IMG/VR virus record: IMGVR_UViG_3300044821_000131
Span: 124,001-188,000 of that record
DNA: 64,000 bases
Direction: 5' to 3' (one strand)
Under the pieces are notes generated by a model. That model had not been told where the DNA came from. It searched no databases and saw only the letters and a list, made by a program, of their open reading frames with translations. How positions within the stretch are numbered: position 1 is the first letter of the stretch; every line of letters begins with the position of its first letter. The translations under genes and the position numbers were made by a program. Shown piece after piece: positions 705 through 50,629 of this stretch.

Positions 705-733
705 TTGTGACGAGTGGCGGATGATTATAAACT
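705..733 (+). promoter_or_regulatory. sigma70-like promoter (leaderless geometry)
   Basis: TTGTGA(705-710)-N17-TAAACT(728-733)-N7-ATG(741). Confidence 0.45.
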
Positions 734-740
734 CACTTTT

Positions 741-2189
741 ATGAGACAGCAATTGATTACCTGGTTGATCGACGAAATCGCACCGGAGATTCGTAAAAAT
801 CGGGATCCCGAAGGCACAATCCTCAAGTTCGCCAACGAAAAGAATTTAGCCCCGGCCTTGGTGCAAAGCCTTGGGCAACTGTTCAACACAGCCAAGACCT
901 TGGCCTTCATGGAGAAGTCCGCCAATCGTGGGGCTTCATTTCCATTACTGGACGTGGACAAGATGGTGGAAAAATATACCGCCGTGCCTCATACGAAGTC
1001 GGCCTCCAAGAATCTGATGGCAGCAACCGAATCAGCGTACGATCACTTCGGCTTCGACACTCCGTCCAAATCCTTGGCTGCCTGTTTCAAGGATGTACCT
1101 GGGTTGAAAATCGAGGATGAGCAGGTGTACAGCGAGGAACCGGTTAAATCGGCCTCGTCTGATACTCGTCAGGCGTTGCGTTCTGAATCTGAGACGCGGC
1201 ATCTGATTGATACTCTAACTCAGGCCAAGGCAGATTTTGAACAGGACGCGCGCGAGTTGCTGATGAAGTCGGCGCAGCAGATCAAACAGGCCGGGCTGAG
1301 TTTCGAAAAGATTGAGCAAGACGCGCTCTGGGTACACGGCGATATAATCAAACCGGCTACGGCGTTGTTGGCGTCTTATTGCTCGGCGGAACACATCAAA
1401 GTGGCCCGGGCACGTGATGCCGGGGAAAATCGTTTGGTTCGGGACAACCTCGATCTCATTAAGAATTTGGAACTGGTGAGTGATTGTTTGTTTAAGATCG
1501 CGGCAACCGATGAGATGATGGCAGCAACCCGCAAGTTGCCAGACAGCGCGAACCCGGTAGACCCCGCTAAAGGCTACAAGTACGAGCGTTCGCCGGATCC
1601 GGAGGAAAGGGTGCGTCCGCTTGATTTACACCAGCCGCCTGACAAACCTCATAAATCCCCAAAAGCTGACCGACCAGAGTCGCGCTCGACTGGTCGATCT
1701 GGAGGACAAAAGAGCGCACCGGCGGCCGAAGACAAGGGCTATTTCGCTCATGTCGGAGGTGCCTTAAATGCTGCGGCCGCACCTTTGACCAACATCCCTA
1801 CTTTCCAGAAGAAGTTCAAAGAGATGCTCGGGCATGGTCGCAATTCGGATCAGCAGCATGTAGATACATCGTTCGAGGATGCAAAGCATCTGGCTGTTTT
1901 ACAGAACTTGTTGACGACAGATGACGTTCTGTCCGAAGCTGATCCGGAAGCTGTCGTAAACATGTACAACACTGTGCGTCGTGCGGCTCCATCTTTGGCT
2001 GGTGACACCAATGTGATGCGAGTGGCGTTGCGCAGTATGATACAGCACGACGGCGTTTCGCCGTTTGACTTGAAAGGTTTTCTTGACACGGAGCAGGCGG
2101 GACAGAAAAATGAATTGAATAGACGCATGTTGAATGATATGGATTATGGCAATGGCAGTGTCGAATCCAAACCGGCAAAACCACAGTAA
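741..2189 (+). CDS. putative internal head protein rich in K-x-A motifs
   Basis: ORF 714..2189 with the ATG at 741 preferred; EKSA, TKSAS, VKSAS, MKSA, FKIAA motifs; upstream of the head cluster. Confidence 0.5.
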   Translation: MRQQLITWLIDEIAPEIRKNRDPEGTILKFANEKNLAPALVQSLGQLFNTAKTLAFMEKSANRGASFPLLDVDKMVEKYTAVPHTKSASKNLMAATESAYDHFGFDTPSKSLAACFKDVPGLKIEDEQVYSEEPVKSASSDTRQALRSESETRHLIDTLTQAKADFEQDARELLMKSAQQIKQAGLSFEKIEQDALWVHGDIIKPATALLASYCSAEHIKVARARDAGENRLVRDNLDLIKNLELVSDCLFKIAATDEMMAATRKLPDSANPVDPAKGYKYERSPDPEERVRPLDLHQPPDKPHKSPKADRPESRSTGRSGGQKSAPAAEDKGYFAHVGGALNAAAAPLTNIPTFQKKFKEMLGHGRNSDQQHVDTSFEDAKHLAVLQNLLTTDDVLSEADPEAVVNMYNTVRRAAPSLAGDTNVMRVALRSMIQHDGVSPFDLKGFLDTEQAGQKNELNRRMLNDMDYGNGSVESKPAKPQ

Positions 2190-2192
2190 ATT

Positions 2193-2492
2193 ATGCCCGA
2201 TGTAATAAAAACCGCAGTGGAAGTTCTAAACGATTTCTTGGCCAAGGCTCCGGAAGCCTGCAATCAACTGTGCGTCTACAAGGTGCCGGCGACGAAAGCG
2301 TTGCTGGATCACCCGACGATTCAGGTGGAAGTGGTTAGTGACACAAAATTCAAAGTAGGATTTTTGGGGCTGCTGAACGGCATTGTGGAGCCGCTTACCG
2401 GAAAACGCGTGGCCGCCATGATTGACAACGACAAGGTTGTTGGATTTGCCGAGTACAAAGTGCCGAAAACTGATAGTCAGCCTGAACCTTAA
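2193..2492 (+). CDS. hypothetical protein
   Basis: 99-aa ORF tightly packed between neighbours, A-rich start context. Confidence 0.7.
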   Translation: MPDVIKTAVEVLNDFLAKAPEACNQLCVYKVPATKALLDHPTIQVEVVSDTKFKVGFLGLLNGIVEPLTGKRVAAMIDNDKVVGFAEYKVPKTDSQPEP

Positions 2493-2493
2493 A

Positions 2494-3117
2494 ATGAAAA
2501 TACGATCTTATATTGACAATAACAACGGGCGCTACCGGGTTCAAATTGAAACATTGGGCTTCACCGCGAACGAAGAAGAGAAACTTTTGGAGTTCGGTGA
2601 ACCGCAGATCGACATCGGCTCGACATTCAATGGATCGGCCTCGCGGCCTGGTGAGAACCCAACCATCGTCACCATCCTGCCTGTCGGAGCGGGCGCCGGG
2701 GCCACTGCTACCGCTACGGTTGACGATACTGGCGCCGTTGTGAGCGTGGTCATTACCAATGCTGGCGGCGGTTATACCAGCGGAGCGACCGCGGTAGTGA
2801 CCGGCGACGGTTCGGCCGCGACGTTGACTGTAACGGTGGATCCAAGTTTGCATACGGTTACGGGCATCGCGGTTAGTGCCGGCGGTTCCGGGTACAATCA
2901 AGTACCACTATCGGTTACATTCTCGTTTCCTCCCACACTGCGGCGCATTCGTGCGGATTTCCCGATCGTGCAGGTGTTTGATCTGAACGATACACCGGAA
3001 GCAGATGTGCGGGCTAAGGTATTTTCCGACACTATTACGTCACGGCTGATCGCGGCCAAGACTGGGCTGCTTTTGATGACCTCGAATTTTGAAGGTGAAA
3101 CTTTGACCACTGTTTAA
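2494..3117 (+). CDS. virion structural protein with two GxGY beta modules
   Basis: ATG at 2494 just after the upstream TAA; ITNAGGGY and VSAGGSGY modules like those in the sheath. Confidence 0.55.
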   Translation: MKIRSYIDNNNGRYRVQIETLGFTANEEEKLLEFGEPQIDIGSTFNGSASRPGENPTIVTILPVGAGAGATATATVDDTGAVVSVVITNAGGGYTSGATAVVTGDGSAATLTVTVDPSLHTVTGIAVSAGGSGYNQVPLSVTFSFPPTLRRIRADFPIVQVFDLNDTPEADVRAKVFSDTITSRLIAAKTGLLLMTSNFEGETLTTV

Positions 3118-3118
3118 A

Positions 3119-4090
3119 ATGTCGCAAGTTCTTAACAATCCACAAGTTCAAGCGGCCACGGCTGGTATCCGCCCGTATTTGATTCCGGCGGCTGTGGGCG
3201 CTGGCATAGGTGGACCACTGATGGCCTACTTCGCGGCTAAGAACCATATCGAAGGCGAGGATCCGAGAATGCGCCGTCATCGAATTCTTCGGAATGCCCT
3301 CTTGGGCTTAACTCTCGGCGGTGCAGCCGGTGGGGGCATCCCGGCGGGTCTGCGTACGATAACGGACCCAGCTCGGGCCATGACTGGGTTTCATCCGATA
3401 GACTCGGCCGCAAATAAAGTCGTACGCAATTGGCTGCCTTCGACAGTTGGTGGTGTTGGCGGCGTGTTGGGGTTGAAACGCCTGGGTCGTAATCGCACGG
3501 AGGCTGCGGACACAATTCATCAAACTCTTGGTTATGAACGTGCGCAGCCTACAGAAGGTGGAAGAGGCTTTCGTCAGCCGTTAAACGAAGTAGAGACTCG
3601 AGACTCATTACTGATGCGCGCCATGGACCCGAAGTCACAGCCTGATGTCATTGGTGGGCTGGCTGCGAAATTGCGACGTGGCGCCGGCAGTGGACCTTGG
3701 CAAGCACGCGAACTTCTCGGTGAGGCCGGCATTCATAATTTCAAACCTATCCACGAGATGCCTTTGTTTACTCCTGAGCAAGGTAGCACTGCGGATTCTT
3801 CGATCGAAGCAATGCGCGGTCTCAAGGCGCATCTTGGTAGTCTCGGGCCAATCAGTCGTTTGATGTCCCGCTTGGTGCCGCATGAATTGCCGGCGATCAA
3901 CGAGGCGGTACAGAATCGGCTCAGTCCTTATCGCGCCGCGGAGTTGTACTCGAAGTACATCAGGCCCAGCGTTTCAAATTCGGTATTGAAGACTGAGGGA
4001 CCACATTGGGGTGTGCCTTGGATTGTTGGAGGTGTCGGTGCCAGCATGCTGGGCGCCAACTATCTTCAAAATAAGTTGGAGGGTAACTGA
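3119..4090 (+). CDS. glycine-zipper hydrophobic protein (possible internal/ejection protein)
   Basis: AAVGAGIGG, LLGLTLGGAAGGG, VGGVGGVLG and VGGVGASMLG segments. Confidence 0.5.
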   Translation: MSQVLNNPQVQAATAGIRPYLIPAAVGAGIGGPLMAYFAAKNHIEGEDPRMRRHRILRNALLGLTLGGAAGGGIPAGLRTITDPARAMTGFHPIDSAANKVVRNWLPSTVGGVGGVLGLKRLGRNRTEAADTIHQTLGYERAQPTEGGRGFRQPLNEVETRDSLLMRAMDPKSQPDVIGGLAAKLRRGAGSGPWQARELLGEAGIHNFKPIHEMPLFTPEQGSTADSSIEAMRGLKAHLGSLGPISRLMSRLVPHELPAINEAVQNRLSPYRAAELYSKYIRPSVSNSVLKTEGPHWGVPWIVGGVGASMLGANYLQNKLEGN

Positions 4091-5587
4091 TTGAATAAAA
4101 TCATCTATACGGGGGACCAAGATCCGCTGCTTGCAGCTTTGGACGGAGTTGTTGCTACGTACTTCGACAATGATCACAGCATCAAGTCGGCGTCATCGAG
4201 TGCATTCTCAAAGAAGCTGATCGCGGATCACATACCGGATGACAAACATTTCGGCGTACATTACGTGGCCCTCGGAGCCAGTGAATACTTTGGTCCAAAT
4301 CGAAACGGGGACTGGTGGAACGAGCCCAGTCTCAAACACGAAGGTGATGATTACGGCATGCACACCTTTGTTAAGCATGGTCATTATTTTCGCGAGCATC
4401 GTAACCGAGATCCGAAGCAAGCTATTGGATCCATTCGCGCTGCGGCTTACAATCCTGAAATGCATCGTGGCGAGTTGATCATCTGGGGAGACAAGGATAA
4501 GGCCGAGAAAGAATATCGAGAGGCCAAGGCCGGAAAGAATCTCGATGGCAGCATGAGTGCCCGTGTAGCGGGGGATGTATGCTCAATTTGCAATCACTTC
4601 GCTTCGAAGAGCAAAGATTATTGCGTACATGCCAAAGAACACATGACGCAGTGGTGGCCGAAGAAATCGAAGTTCGTTTACGTTGATAACGTGAAGCCGA
4701 AGTTTTTTGATTTCAGCGCGGTGGAGAATCGTGCCGACCGCATCGCCAGGCATCTGGAAATTATGTTCCATCCTGATGACATGAAGAAGGCCGCGTCCTA
4801 TAACGGTTTTCTTTTCAGCGACGTCCAAGCGGCACACGCCGGGATAGTGCTGCCAGATTCCTTGCGTGTCGGTTGCTACTCCCCGGATAACCAAGCTTGG
4901 TTGGAGAAGTTGAGTTCCGTTGAGGCTTATATCGGTCACATTCGAACAGACCCGGATACTGTGGCCAAGGACTCGCGTTACGAATTTTTCAAACAGGCCG
5001 CCACTTATGCTTTCGATGAGTCTGAATTTACGGAACAACAACTCGATGCTCTGCGTAAAGTTGAACCGTCGGTCTTGTTCGGCTACTTGGCGAAGCGCGC
5101 CGCCGTTCTTCCATTTCTTCCGTTCTTCGCCTACTCCACCAATCAAACGTTGAAGCTGGCGTCAGAGGACCCTGCGTACAATTACGCCAAGAAGAATCTG
5201 TTGACCACTTTGTTTCAGGATGCAGCTTCGGCGCCAGCGGATGCAGAAATCGAGCAGATGTTCACGCCGGCCTCGTCGATAAAAGTAGCGGCGTGTCCGA
5301 TTGATGACGCGACTGAAAAACTTTTGGAAAAGGTTTGCGCGGACAACACGATTGAAGTTGGTGTTGTCCGAAATAGAATTTTGCAACTGTGCGCGAAAGG
5401 ACAGCCTGTGCAACAGCAGGAAAAGTCGGCCGCGGAATTCACCGTGGATCAAATCAACAAAGCGAAAGTTGTTGCAAAAGCCTATGCTTTCTTTAAGATT
5501 GCCTTCTGTAACGCGGTTGTGGAAAAACGCGGTGAAGAAAGTATTGACGACGCAGCACTTTTACTCATAAACTCTCAACACAATTAA
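4091..5587 (+). CDS. putative prohead (capsid maturation) serine protease
   Basis: NRNGDW, EHRNRD (candidate His), SMSARVAGDVCSIC (candidate Ser plus Zn-like CxxC); located upstream of scaffold and capsid genes; TTG start. Confidence 0.6.
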   Translation: MNKIIYTGDQDPLLAALDGVVATYFDNDHSIKSASSSAFSKKLIADHIPDDKHFGVHYVALGASEYFGPNRNGDWWNEPSLKHEGDDYGMHTFVKHGHYFREHRNRDPKQAIGSIRAAAYNPEMHRGELIIWGDKDKAEKEYREAKAGKNLDGSMSARVAGDVCSICNHFASKSKDYCVHAKEHMTQWWPKKSKFVYVDNVKPKFFDFSAVENRADRIARHLEIMFHPDDMKKAASYNGFLFSDVQAAHAGIVLPDSLRVGCYSPDNQAWLEKLSSVEAYIGHIRTDPDTVAKDSRYEFFKQAATYAFDESEFTEQQLDALRKVEPSVLFGYLAKRAAVLPFLPFFAYSTNQTLKLASEDPAYNYAKKNLLTTLFQDAASAPADAEIEQMFTPASSIKVAACPIDDATEKLLEKVCADNTIEVGVVRNRILQLCAKGQPVQQQEKSAAEFTVDQINKAKVVAKAYAFFKIAFCNAVVEKRGEESIDDAALLLINSQHN

Positions 5588-5594
5588 ATAAATT

Positions 5595-7046
5595 ATGGCC
5601 GTACGAACTTACTCTCAATTGTTGCAGACACTCAATACTCGAGCGGATGCACTCAAACAGGCATCAACCAAATCCGCCGCGGGCGACACCCCGACCGAAA
5701 AAGATCTGCGCGAGAAGGGTACCGTAGAGGTGCCTAAAGATCCGCAGGCCCAGCCGTCCGCGGAACTTCTGCCCGAACGTCCGACAAACACTGAGGTCAC
5801 GCCCGTGCTGTCGGTCGCGCCAGCCAAAGTTGTGGACGGACCGGAAAAACCGGCCAACGCGCTTCTGGCCCAAGCCAAAAAAGTCGCGGGTGCCATCAAC
5901 AGTCTGCGCAACACCAAAGTTGCAGCTCGCGACACTGGTAAAATTTCTCCTGGCCTGGTGAGTGACACCGCGAGTGAAAACAAGAACACCACCGCCCCAA
6001 TCCCCGGATCCACCAGCGATAAGGGTCCTGCCAAAAAGCAGAATCCTGACCCGGTGACGAAGGCCGCCGGCATACCGGAAGTCACGGACGCCACTAACAA
6101 GGGTACCGAACTACCGAAGGGTGATAGCAAAGGCGCGTTGCCTAAACCGGTGGAGAATGAGAACACCACCAAGGTGAACGAACAGAAAGCTCCCGCCGCC
6201 GAAGGTGCCAAAGGCGCTGAAAAGGAAGCCGCATGCGCGTCCGGCTGCACCTGCCCGAAATGCACGGCCAAAATGGCTGCGGCTCTGGAGTTTACACCGG
6301 AATTTCATTACAAGCTGGCCAGTTTGATCTTGGCCACCGATGAAGGTCAACGGTTTGCCCAGCAGATCATTGAGCAGGCCCACGGCGCAGCGGAAGCTGA
6401 AGATATCATCAAGGCTGCGGCCTTCATGGAAGAGGAAAGTGCTCGCCTGCAGGAACTTGAGGCCCAAGGTGCTTTTGCGGCGGAAGAGATGTGGAAAGCC
6501 GCTTCGGAAGAAGAGCGTGTGGCCATTATCAAGTTGGCCAACATTCATGCTTTGGCCAAGGCCGGTTTGAAGACCGACTTTGAGAAGCAGGCTTACGACG
6601 ACGGTGCCGCTGCCGGTGCTGGTATGGCCGACGCTGGTGTTTTGGGTGGTGCCGCTGCTGGTGGGGCTCCTGGTGCGCCTGGTGAAGCTGGTGCCGTTCC
6701 TCCGCCTCCTGGTGCCGAAGCCGGTGCCGCCGGTGCGGATAGCATTTCCGACGAAGACATCGTCGCGGTATTGGAAGAACTCGTGCAGTCCGGAAAAATC
6801 AAGCCGGAAGAGGCACAAGCCATCTTGGAAGCCTTGCAGCAAGGTGGAGGTGGTGAAGCTGGTGCTGACGCGGGTGCGGCTGGTCCCGCTGGTGCAGGTC
6901 CTGCCGGTGCTGATGCTGGTGGCCCTCCGCCGGACGACTCTAACAAATCTCCGGAGGACAAGGAAGCCTCGGCTGTGGTCAAATCCGCGTCGAGCGTTGT
7001 TGACAGCATTATAGCGGCAATGGCCAAGACGGATGCCAAGAAATAA
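5595..7046 (+). CDS. putative capsid scaffolding/core protein
   Basis: low-complexity, A/G/P/E/K-rich, helical acidic core, many K-x-A motifs, between protease and capsid. Confidence 0.55.
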   Translation: MAVRTYSQLLQTLNTRADALKQASTKSAAGDTPTEKDLREKGTVEVPKDPQAQPSAELLPERPTNTEVTPVLSVAPAKVVDGPEKPANALLAQAKKVAGAINSLRNTKVAARDTGKISPGLVSDTASENKNTTAPIPGSTSDKGPAKKQNPDPVTKAAGIPEVTDATNKGTELPKGDSKGALPKPVENENTTKVNEQKAPAAEGAKGAEKEAACASGCTCPKCTAKMAAALEFTPEFHYKLASLILATDEGQRFAQQIIEQAHGAAEAEDIIKAAAFMEEESARLQELEAQGAFAAEEMWKAASEEERVAIIKLANIHALAKAGLKTDFEKQAYDDGAAAGAGMADAGVLGGAAAGGAPGAPGEAGAVPPPPGAEAGAAGADSISDEDIVAVLEELVQSGKIKPEEAQAILEALQQGGGGEAGADAGAAGPAGAGPAGADAGGPPPDDSNKSPEDKEASAVVKSASSVVDSIIAAMAKTDAKK

Positions 7047-7091
7047 TGGCCTTGTCGCAGCGGTCAAGTGATCGCAGTACGGATTGAATCT

Positions 7092-7523
7092 ATGGCAATC
7101 GAAGAGAGAAATTTGATTCCGGTCCTCGATGAAGTTCTGAGCTTCATGGAGGACTCTCTTTCTGAATATTCTCGATCTCAAGCCCAGATTGACCTGCTTC
7201 AAAATAAGATCGCCCAACATGACCGTGTAGTCTTGGAGAAGGTGGCTGAGTTCAAAAAACATGCCTTCGATGGCGATAAGCTCAAAAATACTCTCAACAA
7301 CATGGTACAGATGCGGCTGTTGTCACCTCATGACAGCGCAAAAATTGCAAGCAAGGTCGACAATGATCCAAATGCTATTTTCGAGCTGTTGACAAAGATG
7401 GCTGAGGCTATGATCGCTCCAAGCGAAGGTAGCGAGCTGATAGAGGATAAGGATTTCGTACTGGACGACCCCGATGGTTGGGACGACATGGCAGAAGGCA
7501 AGGCGGTAAGGGTGCGCCCGTAA
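7092..7523 (+). CDS. small helical head-associated protein
   Basis: ORF 7068..7523 with ATG at 7092; EKVA, AKIAS, TKMA motifs. Confidence 0.5.
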   Translation: MAIEERNLIPVLDEVLSFMEDSLSEYSRSQAQIDLLQNKIAQHDRVVLEKVAEFKKHAFDGDKLKNTLNNMVQMRLLSPHDSAKIASKVDNDPNAIFELLTKMAEAMIAPSEGSELIEDKDFVLDDPDGWDDMAEGKAVRVRP

Positions 7524-7530
7524 TTTTTGG

Positions 7531-7558
7531 TTGCATCACGGCTTAGATGCTTTATACT
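7531..7558 (+). promoter_or_regulatory. sigma70-like promoter for the decoration/capsid genes
   Basis: TTGCAT(7531-7536)-N16-TATACT(7553-7558) in the intergenic gap. Confidence 0.45.
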
Positions 7559-7659
7559 TTGTAGGTAATTCAATTTCTCTTGTAGCCAAGTAGGCCAAGA
7601 GAGTCAGAGGTAGTCCGACTGTTTCGGATTACTACAGTAAACACAGTGGAGCAAATTAT

Positions 7660-8241
7660 ATGACCTACGGTACATATTCACGTACGGCACCGCGCGTTAA
7701 CATCCTCAGAGGTTACTGGGGTAACGAGCCGTTCAGCCGCACGTACTCCGCTCCAGTTACCGCTGGTGTAACCATCCTGTCCGGCCAAGTCATCTCTCTG
7801 AGCGCAGGCGCTTGGGTTTTGGGTTGTGCTGCGGGTCTTGAACCGTTTATCGCGTTTCATGACTCGACCGACACGGATGTTCAATCCGCGGGACTACTCC
7901 TCGGGCTCTCATGCGCCGGGCAGTTCGAAATCGAAACCCCATGGTTCGACAATACCGTGGTGTACAACGAAAGCTCGTTCCTCATCGCCGCATCTGGTGG
8001 TTCGTCCACCGCCAACGTGTCGCCGGGAACCGCAGCTCTCGGTGCCATCACCTTGGGTGTTGCCAGCGCCAACGCGGACGTCATCGGCTATGCAGCCGCG
8101 GGCGGTCGCCAGAACGCCACAGCCATCAACAGTCAATCAGGCTTCATCGAAAACTCGGCGGGAGGCGTCTCCAATCCGAATTCGATCTACCTGTTGCGCT
8201 TCAGGACGCAGTGGTTCCCCCACGCGGAATACTCGACCTAA
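7660..8241 (+). CDS. putative head decoration/cement protein
   Basis: 193 aa, beta-rich and small-residue-rich, immediately upstream of the major capsid gene; GGAG before the start. Confidence 0.55.
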   Translation: MTYGTYSRTAPRVNILRGYWGNEPFSRTYSAPVTAGVTILSGQVISLSAGAWVLGCAAGLEPFIAFHDSTDTDVQSAGLLLGLSCAGQFEIETPWFDNTVVYNESSFLIAASGGSSTANVSPGTAALGAITLGVASANADVIGYAAAGGRQNATAINSQSGFIENSAGGVSNPNSIYLLRFRTQWFPHAEYST

Positions 8242-8277
8242 ACCTGACGCTTACCCAAAGAAAGGAAATATACTGTT

Positions 8278-9321
8278 ATGGCTACTGAAAATGCTCAAGT
8301 TGAACCCCAGGTCGAAAACATCCAAGCTTTAAACCGTAAGCTGCTCGACCAGATTACGGAAGCTGATAATGGCGAAGTGAAGCAGGCCTCGGCCGCCGGT
8401 ACGAACATGATTCGTCGGCGTATTCGTGAAGAGGGCTTTGCTCGCAGAATCATCCCTCCGGTTCCCGTCACCAATGATGACCTCGACCGTGTTCTTCAAC
8501 ACGACCGGCCTGTCATCATCGAGGACATGGAACCCCTCTCCAAAGGCGCCAAGACCATCCCGTTTGGCGACAGTGCGGACTCGGAACAATACTATGGCAA
8601 CAAGTTTGCCTGTGTGTTCAATCCGATCACCACGCCGGAGTGGACCAAGGACATCAACGAATTGCGCACCTACCGCATGGACCTTCGCCAAGTCATCACT
8701 GACAACAGCCTGAAGGACATCCAGACGGAAGAGGACGGCAAGTTCATTGCTGGCGTCCAGTCCATCGTCGGTCCCGTGGTTACCAGCGGCGCTCCCGGTG
8801 TGGGTGCTGGTGGTGTCACCCAGAACTTCGAATGCGTGCCGTACAATGTGGCGGCGGGCAATTCGACGGGCACGGGTGCATGGGCCTGGAATCGTGCGGA
8901 TTACGTCAAGGTGTTGTCGGTGCTGGAAAACCAGAACCTGAACAACGGCGTGATTCTGATGAACCGGAAGACGGCCAAACAATTCCTCACGTTCGATCGC
9001 TCCGAAATCGGCGGCGACCTGGCGCAGAGCTTGTTCACGGACGGACTGACGGCGTTGCAGGAAGCGAAGATTTTTGGAGTGAAACATTTGTTCACGATCA
9101 AAAGGAATCTGGTGCCGGACAATACGTTGTTCATCTTCGGCGAACCAGGTTTTTTGGGGAGATTCTACACTCTTTCGGAAATCACGCTTTTTGTCGAAAA
9201 AAAGAAGGACATCTTACGGTCGTCTGCTCGCGAAACCATCTCGGTCACGATCGCCAATGTGTTGGCGGTGGCGCAGGTGACTTTCGTGTCGGCAGTGACC
9301 GCAGGTAACGTCACGCTCTAA
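8278..9321 (+). CDS. major capsid protein (HK97/encapsulin-like)
   Basis: 347 aa; IRRRIREEGFARRIIPP N-terminal motif, IQTEED, ILMN, GEPGFLG; follows protease, scaffold and decoration genes; followed by a terminator. Confidence 0.75.
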   Translation: MATENAQVEPQVENIQALNRKLLDQITEADNGEVKQASAAGTNMIRRRIREEGFARRIIPPVPVTNDDLDRVLQHDRPVIIEDMEPLSKGAKTIPFGDSADSEQYYGNKFACVFNPITTPEWTKDINELRTYRMDLRQVITDNSLKDIQTEEDGKFIAGVQSIVGPVVTSGAPGVGAGGVTQNFECVPYNVAAGNSTGTGAWAWNRADYVKVLSVLENQNLNNGVILMNRKTAKQFLTFDRSEIGGDLAQSLFTDGLTALQEAKIFGVKHLFTIKRNLVPDNTLFIFGEPGFLGRFYTLSEITLFVEKKKDILRSSARETISVTIANVLAVAQVTFVSAVTAGNVTL

Positions 9322-9339
9322 TTTCGACTCTTATCTCAC

Positions 9340-9374
9340 CCGCTCCCGAAGAAATTTGGGAGCGGTTTTTGTTT
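9340..9374 (+). terminator. rho-independent terminator after the capsid gene
   Basis: CCGCTCCC(9340-9347)/GGGAGCGG(9358-9365) stem followed by TTTTTGTTT. Confidence 0.8.
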
Positions 9375-9375
9375 A

Positions 9376-9404
9376 TTGCACCGGTCAAGTCTTTCAACTA
9401 TATT
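9376..9404 (+). promoter_or_regulatory. sigma70-like promoter (leaderless geometry)
   Basis: TTGCAC-N17-TATATT-N6-ATG(9411). Confidence 0.55.
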
Positions 9405-9410
9405 TCTTCA

Positions 9411-10079
9411 ATGAATGAAAATTTCTCTCCCGCTTTCGTCGAAGGCTTTGTCAAATCCTGCTTGGACCAAGGCTTGAACATGCCTCAAACCGAGGCGCTG
9501 TTCCGCCAGCATTCTTTTAACTATCTGTTGTCCTCGCCCAACATCTACAAAGGATTCCAAACCAAACTGGCCAGTTACACCGGACCACTGACAAAATCTG
9601 CGATGTCTCGTTTTCTCACCCCGGCGATCTTGGCCTTGGCCGCGGAGTGTCGGGTCAAGTATGCCAATGATGCGCTCTCGATTAAATTGCGTAAGGAAAC
9701 CGGGCTGCCGGATCCTTCGTGGGAGACGGTTGACCCGGAACTGCAAAAGATTGCAAACAGTTTATCTGGGGCTTTGTCCAGTTACGCAGGCCTTCCAATG
9801 AATCAGAAAATTCTTTTGGCGGCACTGGCTGGATCCGGCGTTGGTGGATTGTCAAGACTAGCGCGTCCTTCGGAGGAAGATCAGATTGAAGGGCGTGGCG
9901 CCATGAGTCGCACGCTCCGTGGAGCTGGTCGTGGGGCAGTGACCGGGGCCGGCGCCGGCGTAGGTTCTGAAGTTGGTGGTTTATCTGGCTTGGAAGCAGC
10001 AGGTTCAAAAGGCGTACTACCTGGTATGTTACTGGGTGCCGGCGCGGGTGGTTATGCTGCGCATCGTTTGACGTCATAA
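9411..10079 (+). CDS. glycine-zipper protein with K-x-A motifs (possible internal head protein)
   Basis: ATG at 9411; C-terminal GxxxG arrays (GSGVGG, GAVTGAGAGVG, GMLLGAGAGG); TKLAS, TKSA, QKIA. Confidence 0.5.
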   Translation: MNENFSPAFVEGFVKSCLDQGLNMPQTEALFRQHSFNYLLSSPNIYKGFQTKLASYTGPLTKSAMSRFLTPAILALAAECRVKYANDALSIKLRKETGLPDPSWETVDPELQKIANSLSGALSSYAGLPMNQKILLAALAGSGVGGLSRLARPSEEDQIEGRGAMSRTLRGAGRGAVTGAGAGVGSEVGGLSGLEAAGSKGVLPGMLLGAGAGGYAAHRLTS

Positions 10080-11995: not shown

Positions 11996-14900
11996 ATGAT
12001 TCAAGGCTACATCCGCCCTCAATTGTTGATCCGCGAAGTACTGCAGCAGCTGCCGAATGTTGATGCTCTCAGTCTTCACGCTTTCGTCGTCGGCCCTCAG
12101 TTCGACCTGTTCCGCTACTATGTCCCCGCCGAGCGCGCGAACATGACCGGCGCGGCCTTCGCCTACAACTCGAACACTAATCCCACGGCGCAGCAAATTG
12201 TGCCATTCGAAGGTCTGAAACCGTATCACACCGTCGATTCCAGCTTTGTCAAGTTGTACGCGGAGAATCTGGAAGGCCAGTCTTGGATCGCCGCCAGCCC
12301 GCCCGATGGTGTCAATACCGCAGATCCGAGCAACCCGTTCTCTTTTCGTCTGCCCAGCCTGAGTTCCCCGAACAAGATTCTGGTCACACTGCGTGGAGCC
12401 AATATCACCGTCACTCCCGGCACTGCCACAGCCCCCAATGGTCTGGACAAGCAGATGGCTACGGTGACCGTCAATTATGGTGGCGCCGGCTATCCGGTGA
12501 ACACCACGTTTACTACTCCAGTTCTTAACGCTACATTGGGTTCTGGTGCCGTCGTTCAGTTGACCACGAATGCCAGTGGCGTTGTCACTTCGGGTGTAGC
12601 GATCTCCCCGGGTTTTGGTTATCGCGCGGCAGCTACCTTCGATGTGCCCGGTGCGTCTGCCGGCACGAACGTTGGCACCGACGACGCCACTTTGATCCCG
12701 CAACTGCAAGGTCGTCCAATTCAACCCGGTGATATCTGCTACACCACCGATCCGTTCGGTCACACTATCCGTCGGGTTGTGCAGTCGGTCCAACAGCAGA
12801 ATCAGCCTGCGACGATCGGTGCTGGAAACAACGGTCAATTCGTTGCCGCGGTCACGAATCCTGGTGAGACGGATGCCTTCTCTTTCGCCAATACTTCCGC
12901 CCCGTTCGATTGGAATATCAATTTGGCCAAAACCTCACTGTTGGCAGTCACGGTCACGGCCGCTGGCTCTGGTTATGTCACGGCACCGGTGGTCACGATT
13001 CCGGCTCCCACTGTGGTGAATCCGGTTACCACGGATAACACGAACGCGGGTATTGCACCTTGGGCCGCTGTTCAGGCCGCCGCTACTGCGATTTTGTCCG
13101 GCGCGACTGTCGGTTCTGTGCAGGTCACTGAACCCGGCACCGGTTATTTCACCGGTGGCGTAACGGCAATTACAGTGGGTACCCGGGGAACGAGCGGAAT
13201 GTACTCGGTGGCTAATCCTCCGATTGTTTCGATCGCGGCTCCCAATGACACCGTGAACGGTGTGCAGGCTACGGCCGTTGCGATCATTTCTCCTGGCGGC
13301 GGGTCACTGCCCTTGGCTGGTGAATTGCTGGCTATTGCGGTCATCAATCCTGGCGCTGGGTATTCTGCGCCTCCGACCGTCACCATCAACGGCGGTACGG
13401 CTACCGCCACGGCTACCGTGACTGCGGCTCCGTCGATCACGGTAGCTGGCACAGCCACAGTGGCGCCGGTGATCCAATCGCTGCCTTCCAATTGGAATGG
13501 TCTGGTTCAAGGTTCAACCTACCAAGGCAAGTACGGCGAACGTTATACTTTGACCTGTACTCAATCCGGCACGACCAACGCCTTGTTTCGGGTGCGTTCA
13601 TCCTCTGGTGGATTCACCGCGGACAATGTCGTACCGACTGTGCGTGGTAATTACTTTTACATCACCGACGCCTCGCTTGGCGGTCTGGCAGTTGAATTGA
13701 ATGCCATCGGCGGTCAAGGTCTCAATTTGGGTGATCAATTCAGCTTCGTAGTGCTGGGCAAGTATTTGCCGCTGATCGTTGCTCCGTCAGGCCAAGTTGT
13801 TACCGTTAACATCATTTCGGCGGGTAGTGGTTATTCCGCCGGCAGTTTAACTTTCACTGCGCCGCCGGCAGGTGGTCGCATTGCAGCCGGTAAATATACG
13901 ATCTCTGCTGGTGCTATTGCCACGATCGTGATCACCGATCCCGGTGCAGGATACATTTATCCCCCGGTGGTGACCGCGTCCGTTGGTACCGGTGCCATGC
14001 TTCAAGCCGTAATCGGGACACCGCAGAATAGTTGCGACATCGCTGTCGTAGCCGGGTCTACGTACAATGGTCCGGTGAACAATCGCTACGTGGTTACCGT
14101 GACTCAGGGCGATACCACCGGTGGTCAGAACAGCTTTGCCAATGCTGTTGTGCGTGTTCAAGATACGGCCGGCATTGACGCAATCAAGTCGATCACGGTG
14201 CAGCAAGGCGTGAACTACAATTTGGGATCCTACGGGCTGCAGTTTATTTTCCCGAACAATCAAGTGTCGCCCAGCGGATTGTCGCCTGGCACTACGGCTA
14301 CGGCCACGCTCACACAGGTTGGCGGTGTAATCACTGCCGTAACTGTTACCAACCCGGGTATCGGCTATGTGGTGCCTCCGGTTATCACTATTACTACGAG
14401 CGGCGGCACCAATGCCGTGCTCGAACCTATCCTCAACAACGGCACGATCGAATCAATTCTGGTGATCAGCGGCGGCAGCGGTTACAGCGGCGCCGACACA
14501 TTAGCCGTTGCAGCCCCGACGACCTATCAACAGGGCTTGCGCACCGGTGACACATATTATATTGACGTCACCGCGCCTACTGCCGGTGGTGCTTACAACA
14601 CAGTTTTGCTGAATGGTCCGGCGGTTGACATCACAGGCTGGGCTCCGACCGATGTCTTGGTGAATCTGTTGAATGTCGAATTTCGAGTTCCGTACACCGG
14701 GGCCATCGCGCAACAGCTCGATCCGGCTGACGCTCCGAATCTGGCGTGGACCGTTGGTGCGTCCGGCATCTCGGTCAAGAGTTATCTGAAGATTTACGCA
14801 CCCGACCGCAATGTTGGATATCAGTATCTCGTCTGTCAGAATGCACCTTATGCCCGGCTCTACGCCAGCTGGCGCGGGCTGGTGCCGTCAACCGGCACGT

Positions 14901-36200: not shown

Positions 36201-36858
36201 GACCGGCCCGGTTGGTCTGAACATTATTTTCTGGAATCTGTGGGACCAGATGTTCAAGTACGAGCCGCAGAGGAATCAGGCTTGGATCGATTTGAACAAA
36301 GCCAGTCGCTTCTATCAGACTGGGCGTGTCGAGAGCTTGGCGGCCCTGTCACCTCTGGTCCTGATCGATACGGTGACTGGTAATTTATCCTCCAACGACG
36401 GTACGCCGATGACAGGACAGTTACTGATCACACTCGATTCGGCGGCGAACTTAACAGGCAAACCAAGCGTTCAAATTAATCTAACGAATCCCGGGGAGAT
36501 TCAACCGATCTACACAAACAATACCGGTCGGCTGGTAGCGATCAGTTCGATTGTCTTGGTCATTGTTTTTCAGAACAATTCTGCGGGTTCTGGAGTTCCG
36601 GATGCTTCGTATTGTGCGAACATCACGATCGGCACCCAAGCCGGCAATTATCGGGACATTGTGGGATCATCGACGGCTGACGTTTATCCTACGCGGCTAT
36701 TTGCCGTGAACCAGGTCAAGGAGGTATTTCCTGACCCAGATCAGCCGGCGCCGTTGATTCAGCCGCATCAGTCGGTATATATTCAGGTTGTTCAGCCTGC
36801 TGGATCTCCGATTACGACGCAACTGGCCGTGGCAAGAATCAAAGGTGCGGTACTTTGA
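33247..36858 (+). CDS. large virion structural/fibre protein with about 12 GxGY modules
   Basis: 1203 aa; YYLSATVPGKVT motif; repeated V(T/L)N.GSGY...P modules. Confidence 0.65.
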   Translation: MIQDLSKIRHVQPNDPVDAGVTSQPTRAIELRLQELEALVYGTGAANLNNQLILYNMPINTQSPNQVGLYNTVFYNPNTNQYELAIADVTLVAGTFTNNPSALAVGVVIAINGGMANILIGGANSWGVGGARTDMLNALIVEGASGYTPGVVYYLSATVPGKVTQYPPSLKIQVLVDSNNNFIVAPIYATPDAIQNIYSLPVGMRPVGSVRTIPPDQDQSIVVGFDALEQYDSVNNLWRLSSEGTVAAISNFGYMVADARVTTEPANPIYVRIQVDGSGHLNIFSANKLADLYDGGPNVFNQFKGVSALLALSSGNQGTVRYYTVVDNTNVTLGTLAFKFTSADISLVRHVIFKFPDHFQGWKMVNAPIPPTAAAVINSSGVITNINVTEGSVGYTTPPTVVIVDGSGPGFGATATAVLNEFGMITSITVNNGGSGYIAPVVSFDSRLTNVQVLNGGSGATATATVIGGSITSVTVTNGGSGYYANPTVSIVDPLGVGLGAQLATEVLNGAVISVAVINGGSGYNTSPLPILKLNNPFNSNYDPGINYAAPLLKLVGQTPTTNPVLAPSFSAAGIVRVDVLSSGIGYSPLTTITITPNLNGAVVHPVVDSDGRIIRVDVLNAGSNFSATPTLTIVNYSGFNGNGASLQAVLGSSLQSVVISNAGKGLTDPAAVLLGTPVRAIEIEASGSGYVSAPAVTIDPPDTAGIPVASGGVQATAVALMGGTIARVEITNAGTGYSQTSPPAITLTGTGGTGAALSLSVGADGTIWAVEVLNPGSGYTALSATIAAPISGTTATVNIYLEGAGSVIGFTITNPGNGYVGLPNVVIAASPTLDNALASSKLVGGTAQFQVTMSGAGGTRIPQTLTLSQGNNLQIWDYNDDFPDIVRPLNACWYYNMNADPNLKALYPAVPIDKVSFLLNGVEQNVTTFNESTQLLSNPDADFAVSRRTLLWTTFDTDGCPWDASVQQYANDTGALGRDCQIPLTGPVGLNIIFWNLWDQMFKYEPQRNQAWIDLNKASRFYQTGRVESLAALSPLVLIDTVTGNLSSNDGTPMTGQLLITLDSAANLTGKPSVQINLTNPGEIQPIYTNNTGRLVAISSIVLVIVFQNNSAGSGVPDASYCANITIGTQAGNYRDIVGSSTADVYPTRLFAVNQVKEVFPDPDQPAPLIQPHQSVYIQVVQPAGSPITTQLAVARIKGAVL

Positions 36859-49567: not shown

Positions 49568-50629
49568 ATGGATTTTGTAAAAGACTGCTCTGGCCGACAT
49601 TTGCTTCGGATCAACAACTTGGTGACCGTACCGGAATACGTCAAACAAGCCTCGATCCCAGACGACGGCCTCGGTGATCTGCCCGAACACTTGTTCGCAG
49701 ATCCTGTCCGTCGTGAGTTTCCCATTGACAGCGCCGGTCATACGTATCTCAGTCAGGCTTACTGTATGTCTGCCGGAATCGATAGCAAGTCAATTCTAGG
49801 AAACATCAAATCGGCCATGTCCCGCTTTCCCGAGGTGCCGGCGGATATCGCAAAACTGGAGGCGGCCATGGATGCCAGCGTCAAATCCAGTTCTGTTGGT
49901 AATCAGCCACAGTTCGCCGTTTACGTCGATTTCGGTGCCGGCAATCCGGACTCTGAAATCGAGTACGTGAAGTCCGGCGGCGTGAAAGGTTTCTATCCCA
50001 TCAATGATGTAGACCAAGTGGTGGATTCTGCCATTCAGATCGGCAACGAGTCGCATCGCATCCCACTGGAACTCTTTGTTGAAGGTTGTCAGGCGATCTA
50101 CAAATCGGCCAAAGATATGGGTTGCACCGAGCAACTACCGAAGACCATTGTTCAATACGGCGTGGAACGCGTGCCGGATTACGAGTTCGTGAAACAACAG
50201 GCTGAGATCCGAGCGCGTGAGACGAATGACCCGATTTACATCGAACTGGCAGCTTCGGCTGAAGACGACACAGAACACGACTCCAATTTGTGGTCCGAAC
50301 TCTGGGGCAAGGCCGATGCGAGTCACGGCGTCAAGTATGCTCGGCACACGTTGAACCCCTATCAGATATTTCATTCCGGCATGCCCAAATCGGCCTTTGA
50401 AGCGGCTATCAATAAATGGACACTCTTGCATGGCGCCGCCATTCCGGTTCCTGCGCTGCAGGCTCTGAAAGAGGACAGCATCAGCCGTGTGATGTCGAAG
50501 GAAGCCGCGGACAAGGTGCAGGAGGTCCTGAACAAGTCAGCCTCAGTTACCGGGGCGGAATTGGCCAACGAGTTGTCAAAGCTCGATAAACCGATCCAGT
50601 TGGCACTGTTGAAACTGGTCGCCCAGTAA
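49568..50629 (+). CDS. putative head-associated protein with K-x-A motifs
   Basis: VKQAS, IKSA, YKSA, PKSA, NKSAS motifs. Confidence 0.45.
   Translation: MDFVKDCSGRHLLRINNLVTVPEYVKQASIPDDGLGDLPEHLFADPVRREFPIDSAGHTYLSQAYCMSAGIDSKSILGNIKSAMSRFPEVPADIAKLEAAMDASVKSSSVGNQPQFAVYVDFGAGNPDSEIEYVKSGGVKGFYPINDVDQVVDSAIQIGNESHRIPLELFVEGCQAIYKSAKDMGCTEQLPKTIVQYGVERVPDYEFVKQQAEIRARETNDPIYIELAASAEDDTEHDSNLWSELWGKADASHGVKYARHTLNPYQIFHSGMPKSAFEAAINKWTLLHGAAIPVPALQALKEDSISRVMSKEAADKVQEVLNKSASVTGAELANELSKLDKPIQLALLKLVAQ

What the first reader, a model, noticed from the sequence alone, without database searches (positions are those of the whole stretch)
741..10079. K-x-A(S/A) motif recurring across head proteins: candidate prohead-protease cleavage code
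Seen: TKSAS, VKSAS, MKSA, FKIAA (741 gene); IKSAS, KKAAS, FKQAA, LKLAS, IKVAA, EKSAA (protease); LKQAS, TKSAA, TKVAA, EKEAA, AKMAA, YKLAS, WKAAS, DKEAS, VKSAS (scaffold); EKVA, AKIAS, TKMA (7092 gene); VKQAS at residues 34-38 of the capsid protein; TKLAS, TKSA (9411 gene). By eye the motif is sparse in sheath, baseplate and fibre proteins. Established: T4 and phiKZ head proteases cut many head proteins at a short motif ending in Glu. Inference: this protease cuts after K-x-A, removing about 37 residues from the capsid protein, processing its own termini and fragmenting the scaffold.
Basis: partly seen in the sequence, partly recalled or inferred. Interest (0 to 1): 0.7.

Follow-up and report, generated by a model that had tools for sequence, protein, structure and literature searches.

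The report
Predicted head-protease cleavage motif K-x-A
The head-assembly proteins of this 204-kb phage and its many uncultured relatives are loaded with a short Lys-x-Ala motif at conserved domain edges, which is most likely the cutting signal of the phage's own head protease; this is a new specificity for a known kind of enzyme, but it is predicted only and not yet shown at the bench.

Summary
All 25 listed instances are present.

- **Enrichment in this genome.** The head block has 31 K-x-A-[SA] against 5.8 expected (z 9.9). The tail block has 3 against 5.7, and the rest of the genome 30 against 30.5.
- **Specificity.** K.A is the top-ranked of about 1,600 gapped dipeptide patterns. KA, K..A, R.A and A.K are not enriched. 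The same scan on T4 head genes recovers T4's known I/L-x-E motif.
- **The enzyme.** The protease gene (4091-5587) has the T4 gp21 / herpesvirus assemblin fold, with invariant H103 and S154.
- **Conservation.** The motif is shared by Salmonella phage Arash, Vibrio phage D69 and about 59 distinct IMG/VR loci.
- **Conserved positions.** The motif sits on both sides of the protease catalytic domain, about 24 residues from the scaffold N-terminus, about 22 residues from the scaffold C-terminus, and at the N-terminal edge of the capsid protein's HK97 fold.

Best reading: a prohead-protease cleavage code with core K-x-A, probably cut after Ala. P1' is S or A here and also E, G, N or Q in relatives. 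It resembles the herpesvirus Ala|Ser sites and their release-site/maturation-site layout.

No cleavage has been measured. The scissile bond is inferred by analogy. I rate it a new variant of a known kind.

The parts
714..2189 (+). It has 11 K-x-A, of which 3 are K-x-A-[SA] (residues 95, 145, 261). Candidate core/scaffold-like substrate.
   Evidence: The equivalent gene in Arash (gp220, a virion protein) has 7 sites and the one in Vibrio phage D69 has 4.
4091..5587 (+). Prohead protease, 498 aa. The catalytic domain is about residues 40-230 (nt 4208-4780). It is followed by a helical C-terminal extension of about 260 residues.
   Evidence: AF2 model has pLDDT above 90 for residues 40-230. VIA-align matches: T4 gp21 (5jbl) Z 10.4, VZV protease Z 9.7, HCMV 7.4, KSHV 5.0. 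K.A is 396 against 140 expected outside the catalytic domain and 43 against 54 inside it, over 55 homologues.
4391..4405 (+). REHRN, containing the invariant His103 (candidate catalytic His).
   Evidence: Invariant in 55/55 and 102/102. It lies within 4 positions of T4 His85 in a weak hhalign alignment.
4541..4564 (+).
   Evidence: Invariant in 55/55 and 102/102. It aligns with T4 gp21 Ser140. Inteins in relatives are inserted right after this motif.
4184..4195 (+). KSAS, protease residues 32-35. Predicted N-terminal self-processing site.
   Evidence: K32 in 55/55 and A34 in 54/55, with L/M/F two places before the Lys in 49/55. K.A is kept in 100/101 wider relatives. It lies in a linker with pLDDT below 50, residues 17-35.
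4784..4798 (+). KKAAS, protease residues 232-236. Predicted release site at the C-terminal end of the catalytic domain.
   Evidence: The family consensus is L-x-K-V-A-[S/G/N], 8-10 residues after the invariant PAD block. K is kept in 45/55 and A in 44/55, and the site in 99/101. It borders the disordered segment 234-249.
5423..5434 (+). KSAA, protease residues 445-448. Predicted C-terminal processing site.
   Evidence: K in 42/55 and A in 48/55. It lies in the segment 437-448, which has pLDDT below 50.
5595..7046 (+). Scaffold candidate, 483 aa. Its ten K-x-A-[SA] sites would cut it into pieces of 5-155 residues.
   Evidence: 10 against 2.1 expected. The role is assigned from its position between protease and capsid gene. 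Only one sequence homologue was found among the loci.
5655..5666 (+). KQAS, scaffold residues 21-24. First scaffold site.
   Evidence: In 56 related loci the first site of the gene after the protease lies at a median of 24 residues from the N-terminus.
6981..6992 (+). KSAS, scaffold residues 463-466. Last scaffold site, leaving an 18-residue C-terminal peptide (analogous to the herpesvirus maturation site).
   Evidence: In 56 related loci the last site lies at a median of 22.5 residues from the C-terminus, and most values are 13-28.
7068..7523 (+).
   Evidence: (p 0.0005).
8278..9321 (+). Major capsid protein, 347 aa, HK97 fold.
   Evidence: Foldseek matches HK97 with E 2e-9 and probability 1.00. 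VIA Z is 15-16. tblastn hits the Arash 'major capsid protein'.
8377..8391 (+). VKQAS, capsid protein residues 34-38. Predicted cut after Ala37, giving a mature N-terminus SAAGTN.
   Evidence: K-x-A is kept at the aligned place in most of 50 related capsid proteins. HK97 prohead II residues 119-121 align to model residues 34-37, and encapsulin residues 5-7 to model residues 28-31. It is the top-scoring site in the genome with the family matrix.
9369..10079 (+). A weak candidate substrate.
   Evidence: (p 0.035).
49568..50629 (+). Unlinked 353-aa protein with K-x-A-[SA] at residues 26, 311 and 323 (3 against 0.4 expected). Candidate packaged protein with a short N-terminal propeptide.
   Evidence: It has no homologue in cultured phages. 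Speculative.

Best explanation
K-x-A is the recognition core of the phage's own prohead serine protease (window 4091-5587). The enzyme has the T4 gp21/herpesvirus-assemblin fold.

Proposed sequence of events inside the assembled prohead:
- The protease frees its catalytic domain by cutting at K32-S-A|S and at K233-A-A|S.
- It trims its own C-terminal extension.
- It chops the scaffold (5595-7046) and other core proteins into small pieces.
- It detaches an 18-residue C-terminal scaffold peptide.
- It removes residues 1-37 of the capsid protein.

The scissile bond is most likely Ala|P1', where P1' is S or A here and also E, G, N or Q in relatives.

Shown here:
- the enrichment of the motif, its specificity and its positional conservation;
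- the protease fold and its conserved Ser and His.

Inferred:
- that the sites are cut;
- that this protease cuts them;
- which bond is cut.
For: 1. **Enrichment.** It is confined to the head-assembly genes (31 against 5.8, z 9.9; tail 3 against 5.7). It is exact in spacing and residue identity.
2. **Positive control.** The same blind scan on T4 head genes ranks the experimentally known I.E first and L.E sixth. The T4 motif is stated in PMC9026906.
3. **Family-wide signal.**
   - Over 1,242 proteins of 59 distinct related loci, K.AS is the most enriched of all a.bc patterns (573 against 128, z 39).
   - 101 wider protease homologues carry 1,293 K.A against 371 expected.
4. **Shape of the logo.** Information runs from P5 (L/M/I/F 67%), P4 (E/V), P3 K and P1 A to P1' (S, E, A) and stops there. 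This is what a protease subsite footprint looks like.
5. **Position.**
   - Sites flank the catalytic domain in nearly all homologues. In the AF2 model they fall in linkers with pLDDT below 50.
   - The first and last scaffold sites lie at medians of 24 and 22.5 residues from the two ends in 56 loci.
   - The capsid-protein site is conserved at the N-terminal edge of the HK97 fold.
6. **Enzyme.** Z 10.4 to T4 gp21 and 9.7 to VZV protease. H103 and S154 are invariant. S154 aligns with T4 Ser140.
7. **Bond.** All characterised enzymes of this fold read P3-x-P1:
   - T4 L/I-x-E and phiKZ S/A-x-E;
   - SPN3US A-x-E, with Ser preferred at P1';
   - HCMV protease substrates ...Asn-Ala-Ser-Ser... and ...Asn-Ala-ACC, that is P1 Ala.
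8. **Avoidance.** K.A is under-represented in the mature part of 49 capsid proteins (24 against 67 expected). This is weak evidence, because other patterns deviate as much.
Against: - No experimental cleavage data exist for this phage or any relative. The Arash virion proteomics paper and its supplement give no peptide-level or N-terminal data and do not mention a protease.
- The co-folding test of the protease domain with the capsid N-terminal peptide gave no answer: 0.50 against 0.44 for a control.
- In the AF2 monomer the capsid-protein site sits at the start of a helix (residues 32-52), not in a loop.
- Flank preferences in this genome are weak, so a family matrix separates head sites from other K.A sites only poorly.
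- A few related capsid proteins lack K-x-A at the aligned place.
- The portal candidate has seven sites, including internal ones. Cutting all of them would seem destructive, so not every motif can be a used site.
- The third catalytic residue is unresolved.
Confidence: 0.72

Rival explanations
1. The sites are cut by this protease, but at a different bond in or beside the motif. Examples are after Lys (as HK97 cuts Lys|Ser) or after the P1' residue. In that case the mature capsid protein would not start at SAAGTN.
For: The bond is inferred only from analogy and from the shape of the logo. Lys is the single most constrained residue. The HK97 cut after Lys103 is from my own recollection and was not checked here.
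Against: - Conservation continues two residues past the Lys to an equally invariant Ala, then a biased next residue, and then stops.
- All characterised enzymes of this fold place the invariant residue two places after the first specific one, at P1.
Confidence: 0.12
2. K-x-A, with its upstream hydrophobic residue, is an uncleaved docking or targeting motif. It would let core proteins, protease and capsid protein bind a common partner during prohead assembly.
For: - P5 hydrophobic and P1 Ala lie four residues apart, on one face if the segment is helical.
- The capsid-protein site is modelled as helical.
- Many copies per protein would suit multivalent binding.
Against: - A binding motif gives no reason for sites to bracket the protease catalytic domain in disordered linkers.
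- It gives no reason for sites to sit 13-28 residues from scaffold ends.
- It gives no reason for the motif to be avoided in the mature capsid protein.
- The parallel with known cleavage layouts in T4, phiKZ and herpesviruses is close.
Confidence: 0.1
3. The sites are cleavage sites, but for another enzyme: a host protease or a second phage protease.
For: Staphylococcal phage 80alpha uses a host protease for capsid and scaffold processing (my own recollection, not checked here).
Against: - The motif tracks this protease family across 59 loci from very different environments, and in phage G's gp19 and portal.
- The most conserved sites are in the protease itself.
Confidence: 0.04
4. The pattern is a chance or compositional artefact of Ala/Lys/Glu-rich helical proteins or of internal repeats.
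For: The scaffold is Ala-rich. Arash and D69 scaffolds contain repeated units carrying the motif.
Against: - Composition-preserving shuffles never reach the observed count.
- Neighbouring spacings and R.A are not enriched.
- Sites are positionally conserved in otherwise divergent sequence.
Confidence: 0.01

Closest known systems
T4 gp21 prohead protease and its L/I-x-E code (also phiKZ gp175 S/A-x-E and SPN3US gp245 A-x-E)
   Same: - Same protease fold (5jbl Z 10.4).
- The catalytic Ser aligns.
- A three-residue P3-x-P1 code is scattered through the scaffold, core proteins, the protease itself and the capsid protein N-terminus.
- The scaffold is cut into many pieces.
- The known motif is detectable by the same enrichment scan.
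- SPN3US also prefers Ser at P1'.
   Different: - P1 is Ala, not Glu, and P3 is Lys, not L/I or S/A/G. [LI].E and [SAG].E are at expectation here.
- There is no Pfam or PHROG sequence match to the T4 family.
- The protease carries a C-terminal extension of about 260 residues and a Cys3-His cluster.
Herpesvirus assemblin (protease of the UL26 / UL80 type) with release (R) and maturation (M) sites
   Same: - Same fold (VZV Z 9.7, HCMV 7.4, KSHV 5.0).
- P1 Ala and frequent P1' Ser.
- One site at the end of the catalytic domain releases it from a C-terminal extension, and another lies about 20-25 residues from the scaffold C-terminus.
   Different: - P3 is Lys instead of a bulky hydrophobic residue. 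[VLI].A is not enriched.
- The scaffold is a separate downstream gene, not a nested in-frame one.
- There are many more sites per protein.
- The Ser-His-His triad is not established, because His180 is lost together with the Cys cluster in about 12-20% of relatives.
Salmonella phage Arash (OQ632216) and Vibrio phages D69/D181/D148 head modules
   Same: - Nearest cultured relatives: capsid protein 27-29% identical, protease 35-37% over the catalytic domain.
- Same gene order.
- Same motif load: for example Arash gp220 has 7 sites, gp223 has 6 and gp225 has 5; the D69 scaffold has 10.
   Different: - Their capsid-protein site is K-E-A-G.
- They show a stronger L/M-E-K-x-A context.
- Arash is described as an orphan phage. 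Its paper mentions no protease or cleavage, and its gp222 is annotated only as 'structural protein'.
HK97 gp4/gp5 maturation
   Same: HK97-fold capsid protein, with removal of an N-terminal segment by a phage protease of the same broad fold class.
   Different: - Only about 37 residues would be removed here, and a separate scaffold exists. HK97 instead has a delta domain of about 100 residues.
- The predicted new N-terminus aligns about 15 residues inside HK97's mature N-arm.

Membership tests
Assemblin-fold prohead serine proteases (T4 gp21 / herpesvirus protease superfamily) | Three-dimensional fold of the catalytic domain | tested here: met
   The top four of 48,161 chains are T4 gp21 (Z 10.4, 127 residues, rmsd 2.6), VZV (9.7), HCMV (7.4) and KSHV (5.0) proteases. 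Unrelated folds follow at Z 5 or less. The model has pLDDT above 90 over residues 40-230.
Assemblin-fold prohead serine proteases (T4 gp21 / herpesvirus protease superfamily) | Conserved catalytic Ser and His | tested here: met
   H103 and S154 are invariant in 55/55 and 102/102. S154 aligns to T4 Ser140 and H103 lies within 4 positions of T4 His85, in a low-probability hhalign. Geometry in the model could not be inspected.
Assemblin-fold prohead serine proteases (T4 gp21 / herpesvirus protease superfamily) | Third triad residue (His in herpesviruses) | tested here: inconclusive
   H180 lies 26 residues after the Ser, similar to the spacing I recall for HCMV. It belongs to a C-x2-C-x10-C-x-H cluster that is replaced as a block in about 12-20% of relatives.
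Assemblin-fold prohead serine proteases (T4 gp21 / herpesvirus protease superfamily) | Sequence-profile membership in the curated families of T4 gp21 or assemblin | tested here: not met
   There are no Pfam hits at E 0.01. The only PHROG hit is phrog_2774 'unknown function'. A PDB profile search finds no protease. It is therefore a separate sequence family within the fold class.
Assemblin-fold prohead serine proteases (T4 gp21 / herpesvirus protease superfamily) | Gene sits in the head module between the portal-side genes and the scaffold and capsid genes | tested here: met
   The gene order is seen and is conserved in Arash, D69 and the IMG/VR loci.
Assemblin-fold prohead serine proteases (T4 gp21 / herpesvirus protease superfamily) | Proteolytic activity on head proteins and on itself | not testable with these tools
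   This needs virion N-terminomics or co-expression assays.
Glu-P1 cleavage code of T4 / phiKZ type | Motif ends in Glu (L/I-x-E or S/A/G-x-E) and is enriched in head proteins | tested here: not met
   In the head block [LI].E is 39 against 34.6 and [SAG].E is 70 against 66.8. K.A is 69 against 29.5.
Herpesvirus-type cleavage code (hydrophobic-x-Ala|Ser) | P1 Ala and P1' Ser | tested here: met
   This holds at the level of motif statistics only. Ala is invariant by definition of the motif and conserved at anchor sites (54/55, 44/55, 48/55). Ser is the most enriched next residue (4-fold). The bond itself was not measured.
Herpesvirus-type cleavage code (hydrophobic-x-Ala|Ser) | Bulky hydrophobic residue at P3 | tested here: not met
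   P3 is Lys. [VLI].A is 87 against 91 expected.
Herpesvirus-type cleavage code (hydrophobic-x-Ala|Ser) | Release site after the protease domain, and maturation site about 25 residues from the scaffold C-terminus | tested here: met
   The post-domain site is kept in 45/55 and 99/101 homologues. The last scaffold site is at a median of 22.5 residues from the C-terminus in 56 loci. The herpesvirus layout is described in PMC4498786.
Herpesvirus-type cleavage code (hydrophobic-x-Ala|Ser) | Scaffold encoded in frame within the 3' part of the protease gene | not tested
   The scaffold candidate is a separate gene (5595-7046). I noticed no Met in protease residues 237-390 when reading the translation. 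Internal initiation was not examined.

The most novel reading that the evidence does not exclude
A large, almost wholly uncultured clade of tailed phages has about 2,459 protease clusters at 50% identity. It includes jumbo phages with their own multisubunit RNA polymerase. The clade would use an assemblin-fold protease that keeps the herpesvirus-like Ala|Ser scissile bond and the release-site/maturation-site layout, but reads Lys at P3.

If so:
- Ala-Ser cutting and the R/M logic are either ancestral to the phage-herpesvirus protease lineage or have arisen twice.
- K-x-A can be used as a sequence-only label to predict which unlinked genes encode head-packaged (possibly ejected) proteins in these phages.
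Probability: 0.3. Interest if true: 0.7.

Novelty: new variant of a known kind. Interest (0 to 1): 0.55.

Why it matters
Prohead-protease cleavage codes have been worked out for very few phage lineages: the T4-like and phiKZ-like ones, both ending in Glu. In those lineages the codes made it possible to define propeptides, internal and ejected proteins, and the maturation pathway.

A second, different code would matter in three ways:
- It would give immediate, testable annotations for the head proteins of Salmonella phage Arash, the oyster Vibrio phages and hundreds of metagenomic phages whose head genes are all 'hypothetical'.
- It would show how specificity drifts within the assemblin fold, here Lys at P3 and Ala at P1.
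- It would supply a phage example with the herpesvirus-type Ala|Ser bond and R/M-site layout.

It is a prediction only. The concept itself is established, which limits the surprise.

Tried and rejected
- **Sequence searches that found nothing.**
  - Megablast of the head region against cultured phages gave no match.
  - A single-protein scan of IMG/VR found no relatives. An alignment query was needed.
  - Pfam gave nothing for ten head proteins.
  - A PDB profile search by sequence found no protease.
  - tblastn of the two unlinked motif-rich proteins against cultured phages gave no match.
- **Foldseek on the full-length protease model.** It gave only weak hits, though herpesvirus proteases were among them. 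VIA-align was needed to see the fold.
- **Co-folding.** Protease domain with the capsid N-terminal peptide gave 'no answer', so I do not use it either way.
- **Family position matrix.** I built it to predict further substrates in this genome. The top two sites are the capsid and release sites, but discrimination is otherwise poor, so I make no substrate list from it.
- **Depletion in the mature capsid protein.** K.A is depleted there, but other patterns deviate as much because the sequences are related. I treat this as weak.
- **Arash paper and supplement.** They hold no peptide-level data.
- **Literature searches.**
  - Searches for a K-X-A prohead motif or any similar report found nothing.
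  - I could not retrieve a paper that states the herpesvirus consensus outright. I rely on the HCMV substrate sequences in PMC13486704 and on my own knowledge.
- **Portal candidate.** The ESM Atlas look-up was uninformative. Its portal role rests on position and size only.
- **hhalign to T4 gp21.** It has low probability (2.3%). I use it only for the Ser alignment, which agrees with the structural match.

Full report
**Where the window lies.** The window is bases 124,001-188,000 of a 204,257-bp IMG/VR virus contig with direct terminal repeats, rated complete. Nearly all genes are on the + strand. The finding covers the head-assembly module.

**Checking the observation.** Two more were missed: AKRAA in the protease and IKAAA in the scaffold. 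I called genes over the whole genome and compared motif counts with shuffles that keep each protein's composition.

| Block | Proteins | Residues | Observed K-x-A-[SA] | Shuffle mean |
|---|---|---|---|---|
| Head | 12 | 4,096 | 31 | 5.8 (z 9.9; 0 of 300 shuffles reach it) |
| Tail/baseplate | 24 | 12,200 | 3 | 5.7 |
| Rest of genome | 237 | not counted here | 30 | 30.5 |

- The genome-wide excess of 64 against 42 sits in a handful of proteins.
  - These are the protease (8 against 0.9), the scaffold (10 against 2.1) and the 714 gene (3 against 0.8).
  - The 724-aa gene just upstream of the window has 7 against 0.7.
  - Two unlinked genes also stand out.
- A blind scan of about 1,600 dipeptide patterns with gaps 0-3 puts K.A first in the head block (z 7.3; the next pattern has z 3.7).
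- KA, K..A, K...A, R.A and A.K are not enriched. The signal is therefore not a by-product of Ala/Lys-rich helices.
- As a check on the method, the same scan on the T4 head genes ranks I.E first and L.E sixth. That is the experimentally established gp21 motif (PMC9026906).

**The proteins.**
- **Capsid protein.** The 347-aa protein at 8278-9321 has the HK97 fold. It matches the annotated capsid protein of Salmonella phage Arash.
- **Protease.**
  - The 498-aa protein at 4091-5587 has no Pfam match.
  - Its AF2 model has a confident domain at residues 40-230.
  - The best structural matches among 48,161 chains are T4 gp21 (Z 10.4) and the proteases of VZV, HCMV and KSHV. Unrelated folds score lower.
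- **Catalytic residues.**
  - H103 and S154 are invariant in 55 IMG/VR homologues and in 101 wider ones.
  - S154 aligns with T4 Ser140 in a weak profile alignment.
  - The third catalytic residue is open. H180 has herpesvirus-like spacing but belongs to a Cys3-His cluster that is lost as a block in some relatives.
- **Scaffold.** This role for 5595-7046 rests on gene position and composition only.
- **Portal candidate.** The 724-aa upstream protein is homologous to Arash virion protein gp218. Nothing confirms that it is the portal.

**Relatives.** No close DNA relative exists among cultured phages.
- By protein, the nearest are the 'orphan' Salmonella phage Arash and three oyster Vibrio phages. 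More distant are phage G gp19 and cluster C mycobacteriophages.
- An alignment query fetched 80 IMG/VR loci, 59 of them distinct.
- A full-library search found 2,459 clusters at 50% identity with E up to 0.001.
- The motif load is present throughout.
  - Every locus has 2-4 times the expected count, concentrated in the genes around the protease.
  - Over all 1,242 proteins of the distinct loci, K.AS is the most enriched of all 8,000 a.bc patterns (573 against 128). K.AE and K.AA follow, and EK.A stands at 695 against 141.
- The pooled logo of 1,166 sites reads: P5 L/M/I/F (67%), P4 E or V, P3 K, P2 any, P1 A, P1' S, E or A. Nothing is constrained beyond that.
- The larger phages, including this one and Arash, favour S/A at P1'. 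A group of roughly 50-60-kb contigs favours E.
- In this genome the flanks are weaker, and N, G, Q and E also follow the Ala.

**Positional evidence.** This is the strongest support.
- **Protease.**
  - The Lys of the N-terminal site is invariant (55/55) and its Ala is kept in 54/55. The surrounding segment is otherwise unconserved and modelled as disordered.
  - A second site, consensus L-x-K-V-A-[S/G/N], follows the last conserved block of the catalytic domain by 8-10 residues (K 45/55, A 44/55).
  - A third site lies near the C-terminus (K 42/55, A 48/55).
  - In the 101 wider homologues the first two sites are kept in 100 and 99.
  - K.A is 396 against 140 outside the catalytic domain and 43 against 54 inside it.
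- **Scaffold.** In the gene after the protease in 56 loci, the first site lies at a median of 24 residues from the N-terminus. The last lies at a median of 22.5 residues from the C-terminus. Here the values are 23 and 18 residues.
- **Capsid protein.** K-x-A is kept at the same N-terminal place in most of 50 homologues. It lies at the N-terminal edge of what aligns to HK97 prohead II and to encapsulins.

**How it most likely works.**
- All characterised enzymes of this fold recognise P3-x-P1 and cut after P1.
  - T4 reads L/I-x-E and phiKZ reads S/A-x-E.
  - SPN3US reads A-x-E, with Val at P4 and Ser at P1'.
  - HCMV protease is assayed on ...Asn-Ala-Ser-Ser... and ...Asn-Ala-ACC substrates, so its P1 is Ala.
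- By analogy, and because the logo ends one residue after the Ala, I place the cut between Ala and the next residue.
- The layout mirrors the herpesvirus R and M sites described in PMC4498786. One site releases the catalytic domain from a C-terminal extension. Another lies about 20 residues from the scaffold C-terminus.
- The general herpesvirus consensus (V/L/I)-x-A|S is from my own knowledge.

**Weak points.**
- Nothing has been measured.
- The Arash proteomics paper gives no peptide-level data and does not mention a protease.
- Co-folding gave no answer.
- The capsid-protein site is modelled as helical.
- Some relatives lack the capsid-protein site.
- The portal candidate carries internal sites that can hardly all be used.
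- A family matrix does not cleanly pick substrates in this genome.

**Novelty.** I found no report of a Lys-x-Ala code for any prohead protease. The nearest cultured phage is described without any protease annotation. The kind of system is well known. The specificity, the breadth of the clade and the herpesvirus-like bond and site layout are new. I rate it a new variant of a known kind, interest 0.55, with confidence 0.72 that K-x-A is the protease's cleavage signal. My confidence that the cut is exactly after the Ala is lower.

Noticed in passing
Relatives of window 4091-5587 (proteins P0002, P0009, P0026, P0030, P0085 and about 30 others): About a quarter of the 150 best protease homologues are 700-930 aa, because inteins of about 400 residues are inserted. 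There are at least four different insertion points inside conserved motifs. Examples are directly after the catalytic S-M-S (the intein starts CFPAGT), at the first or second Cys of the CxxC, and before NRNGD. C-terminal junctions read HN|C or HN|S. The window's own gene has no intein.
   Followed up: partly
window 4580-4633 (protease residues 164-180): A C-x2-C-x10-C-x-H cluster lies inside the protease catalytic domain and is probably a zinc site. It is conserved in about 80-88% of relatives and replaced as a block in the others (C to S/D, C to T/S, C to E/D, H to D/Y). T4 gp21 has no obvious counterpart.
   Followed up: partly
L086:7096-8940 (genome 117096-118940, upstream of the window): A 614-aa protein matches phage RNA polymerase beta-subunit families (phrog_25354 at 1e-45, phrog_3015). 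Arash has the same gene next to its head module and packs RNA polymerase subunits in virions. This phage therefore probably has a phiKZ-like multisubunit RNA polymerase.
   Followed up: partly
L086:11561-13735 (genome 121561-123735, just upstream of the window): The 724-aa portal candidate is a homologue of Arash gp218. It carries 7 K-x-A-[SA], five of them clustered in a variable insertion (residues 145-245) that is even larger and richer in sites in the nearest relative, L004. No profile or fold evidence confirms that it is a portal.
   Followed up: partly
L087:856-2181 (genome 27856-29181) and window 49568-50629; also window 47005-49545 (minus strand): These are unlinked proteins with motif excess. 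The first has 5 against 0.7 and the second 3 against 0.4, with a site at residues 26-29. The 846-aa minus-strand protein has sites at residues 24 and 787. They could be head-packaged proteins with short propeptides. None of the first two has a homologue in cultured phages.
   Followed up: partly
window 38386-41835 and 41832-45263: Two adjacent proteins of about 1,145 aa carry long collagen-like Gly-x-y repeats (G.TG 115 and 29 times; P.GP 70 and 18 times). They are presumably fibres. The listed ORF 41181-45263 overlaps the first gene, and its real start is probably the ATG at 41832.
   Followed up: no
window 11996-16261, 33247-36858 and 2494-3117: Repeated domains marked by G-[AGS]-G-Y occur in the 1,421-aa and 1,203-aa proteins. 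The same domain type is in the small head-module protein 2494-3117, which matches PHROGs annotated as baseplate wedge subunit or head closure.
   Followed up: no
window 6234-6275 (scaffold residues about 214-227): A Cys cluster (C-x3-C-x-C-x2-C) sits between two motif sites in the scaffold candidate. This is unusual for a scaffold protein.
   Followed up: no
window 2193-2492 / 2422-3117: The mechanical ORF 2422-3117 (TTG start) overlaps the preceding gene by 70 nt. The ATG at 2494 is the more likely start.
   Followed up: no
L084 (Bacillus phage G, NC_023719, genes 14 and 19): Phage G's distant protease homologue gp19 also has K-x-A-[SA] before and after its catalytic domain (residues 43, 248, 274). 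Its portal has them near both ends (18, 55, 625). Its capsid protein has R-V-A at the aligned place. The code may reach beyond the Arash-like clade. Cluster C mycobacteriophage Cali shows no clear enrichment.
   Followed up: partly
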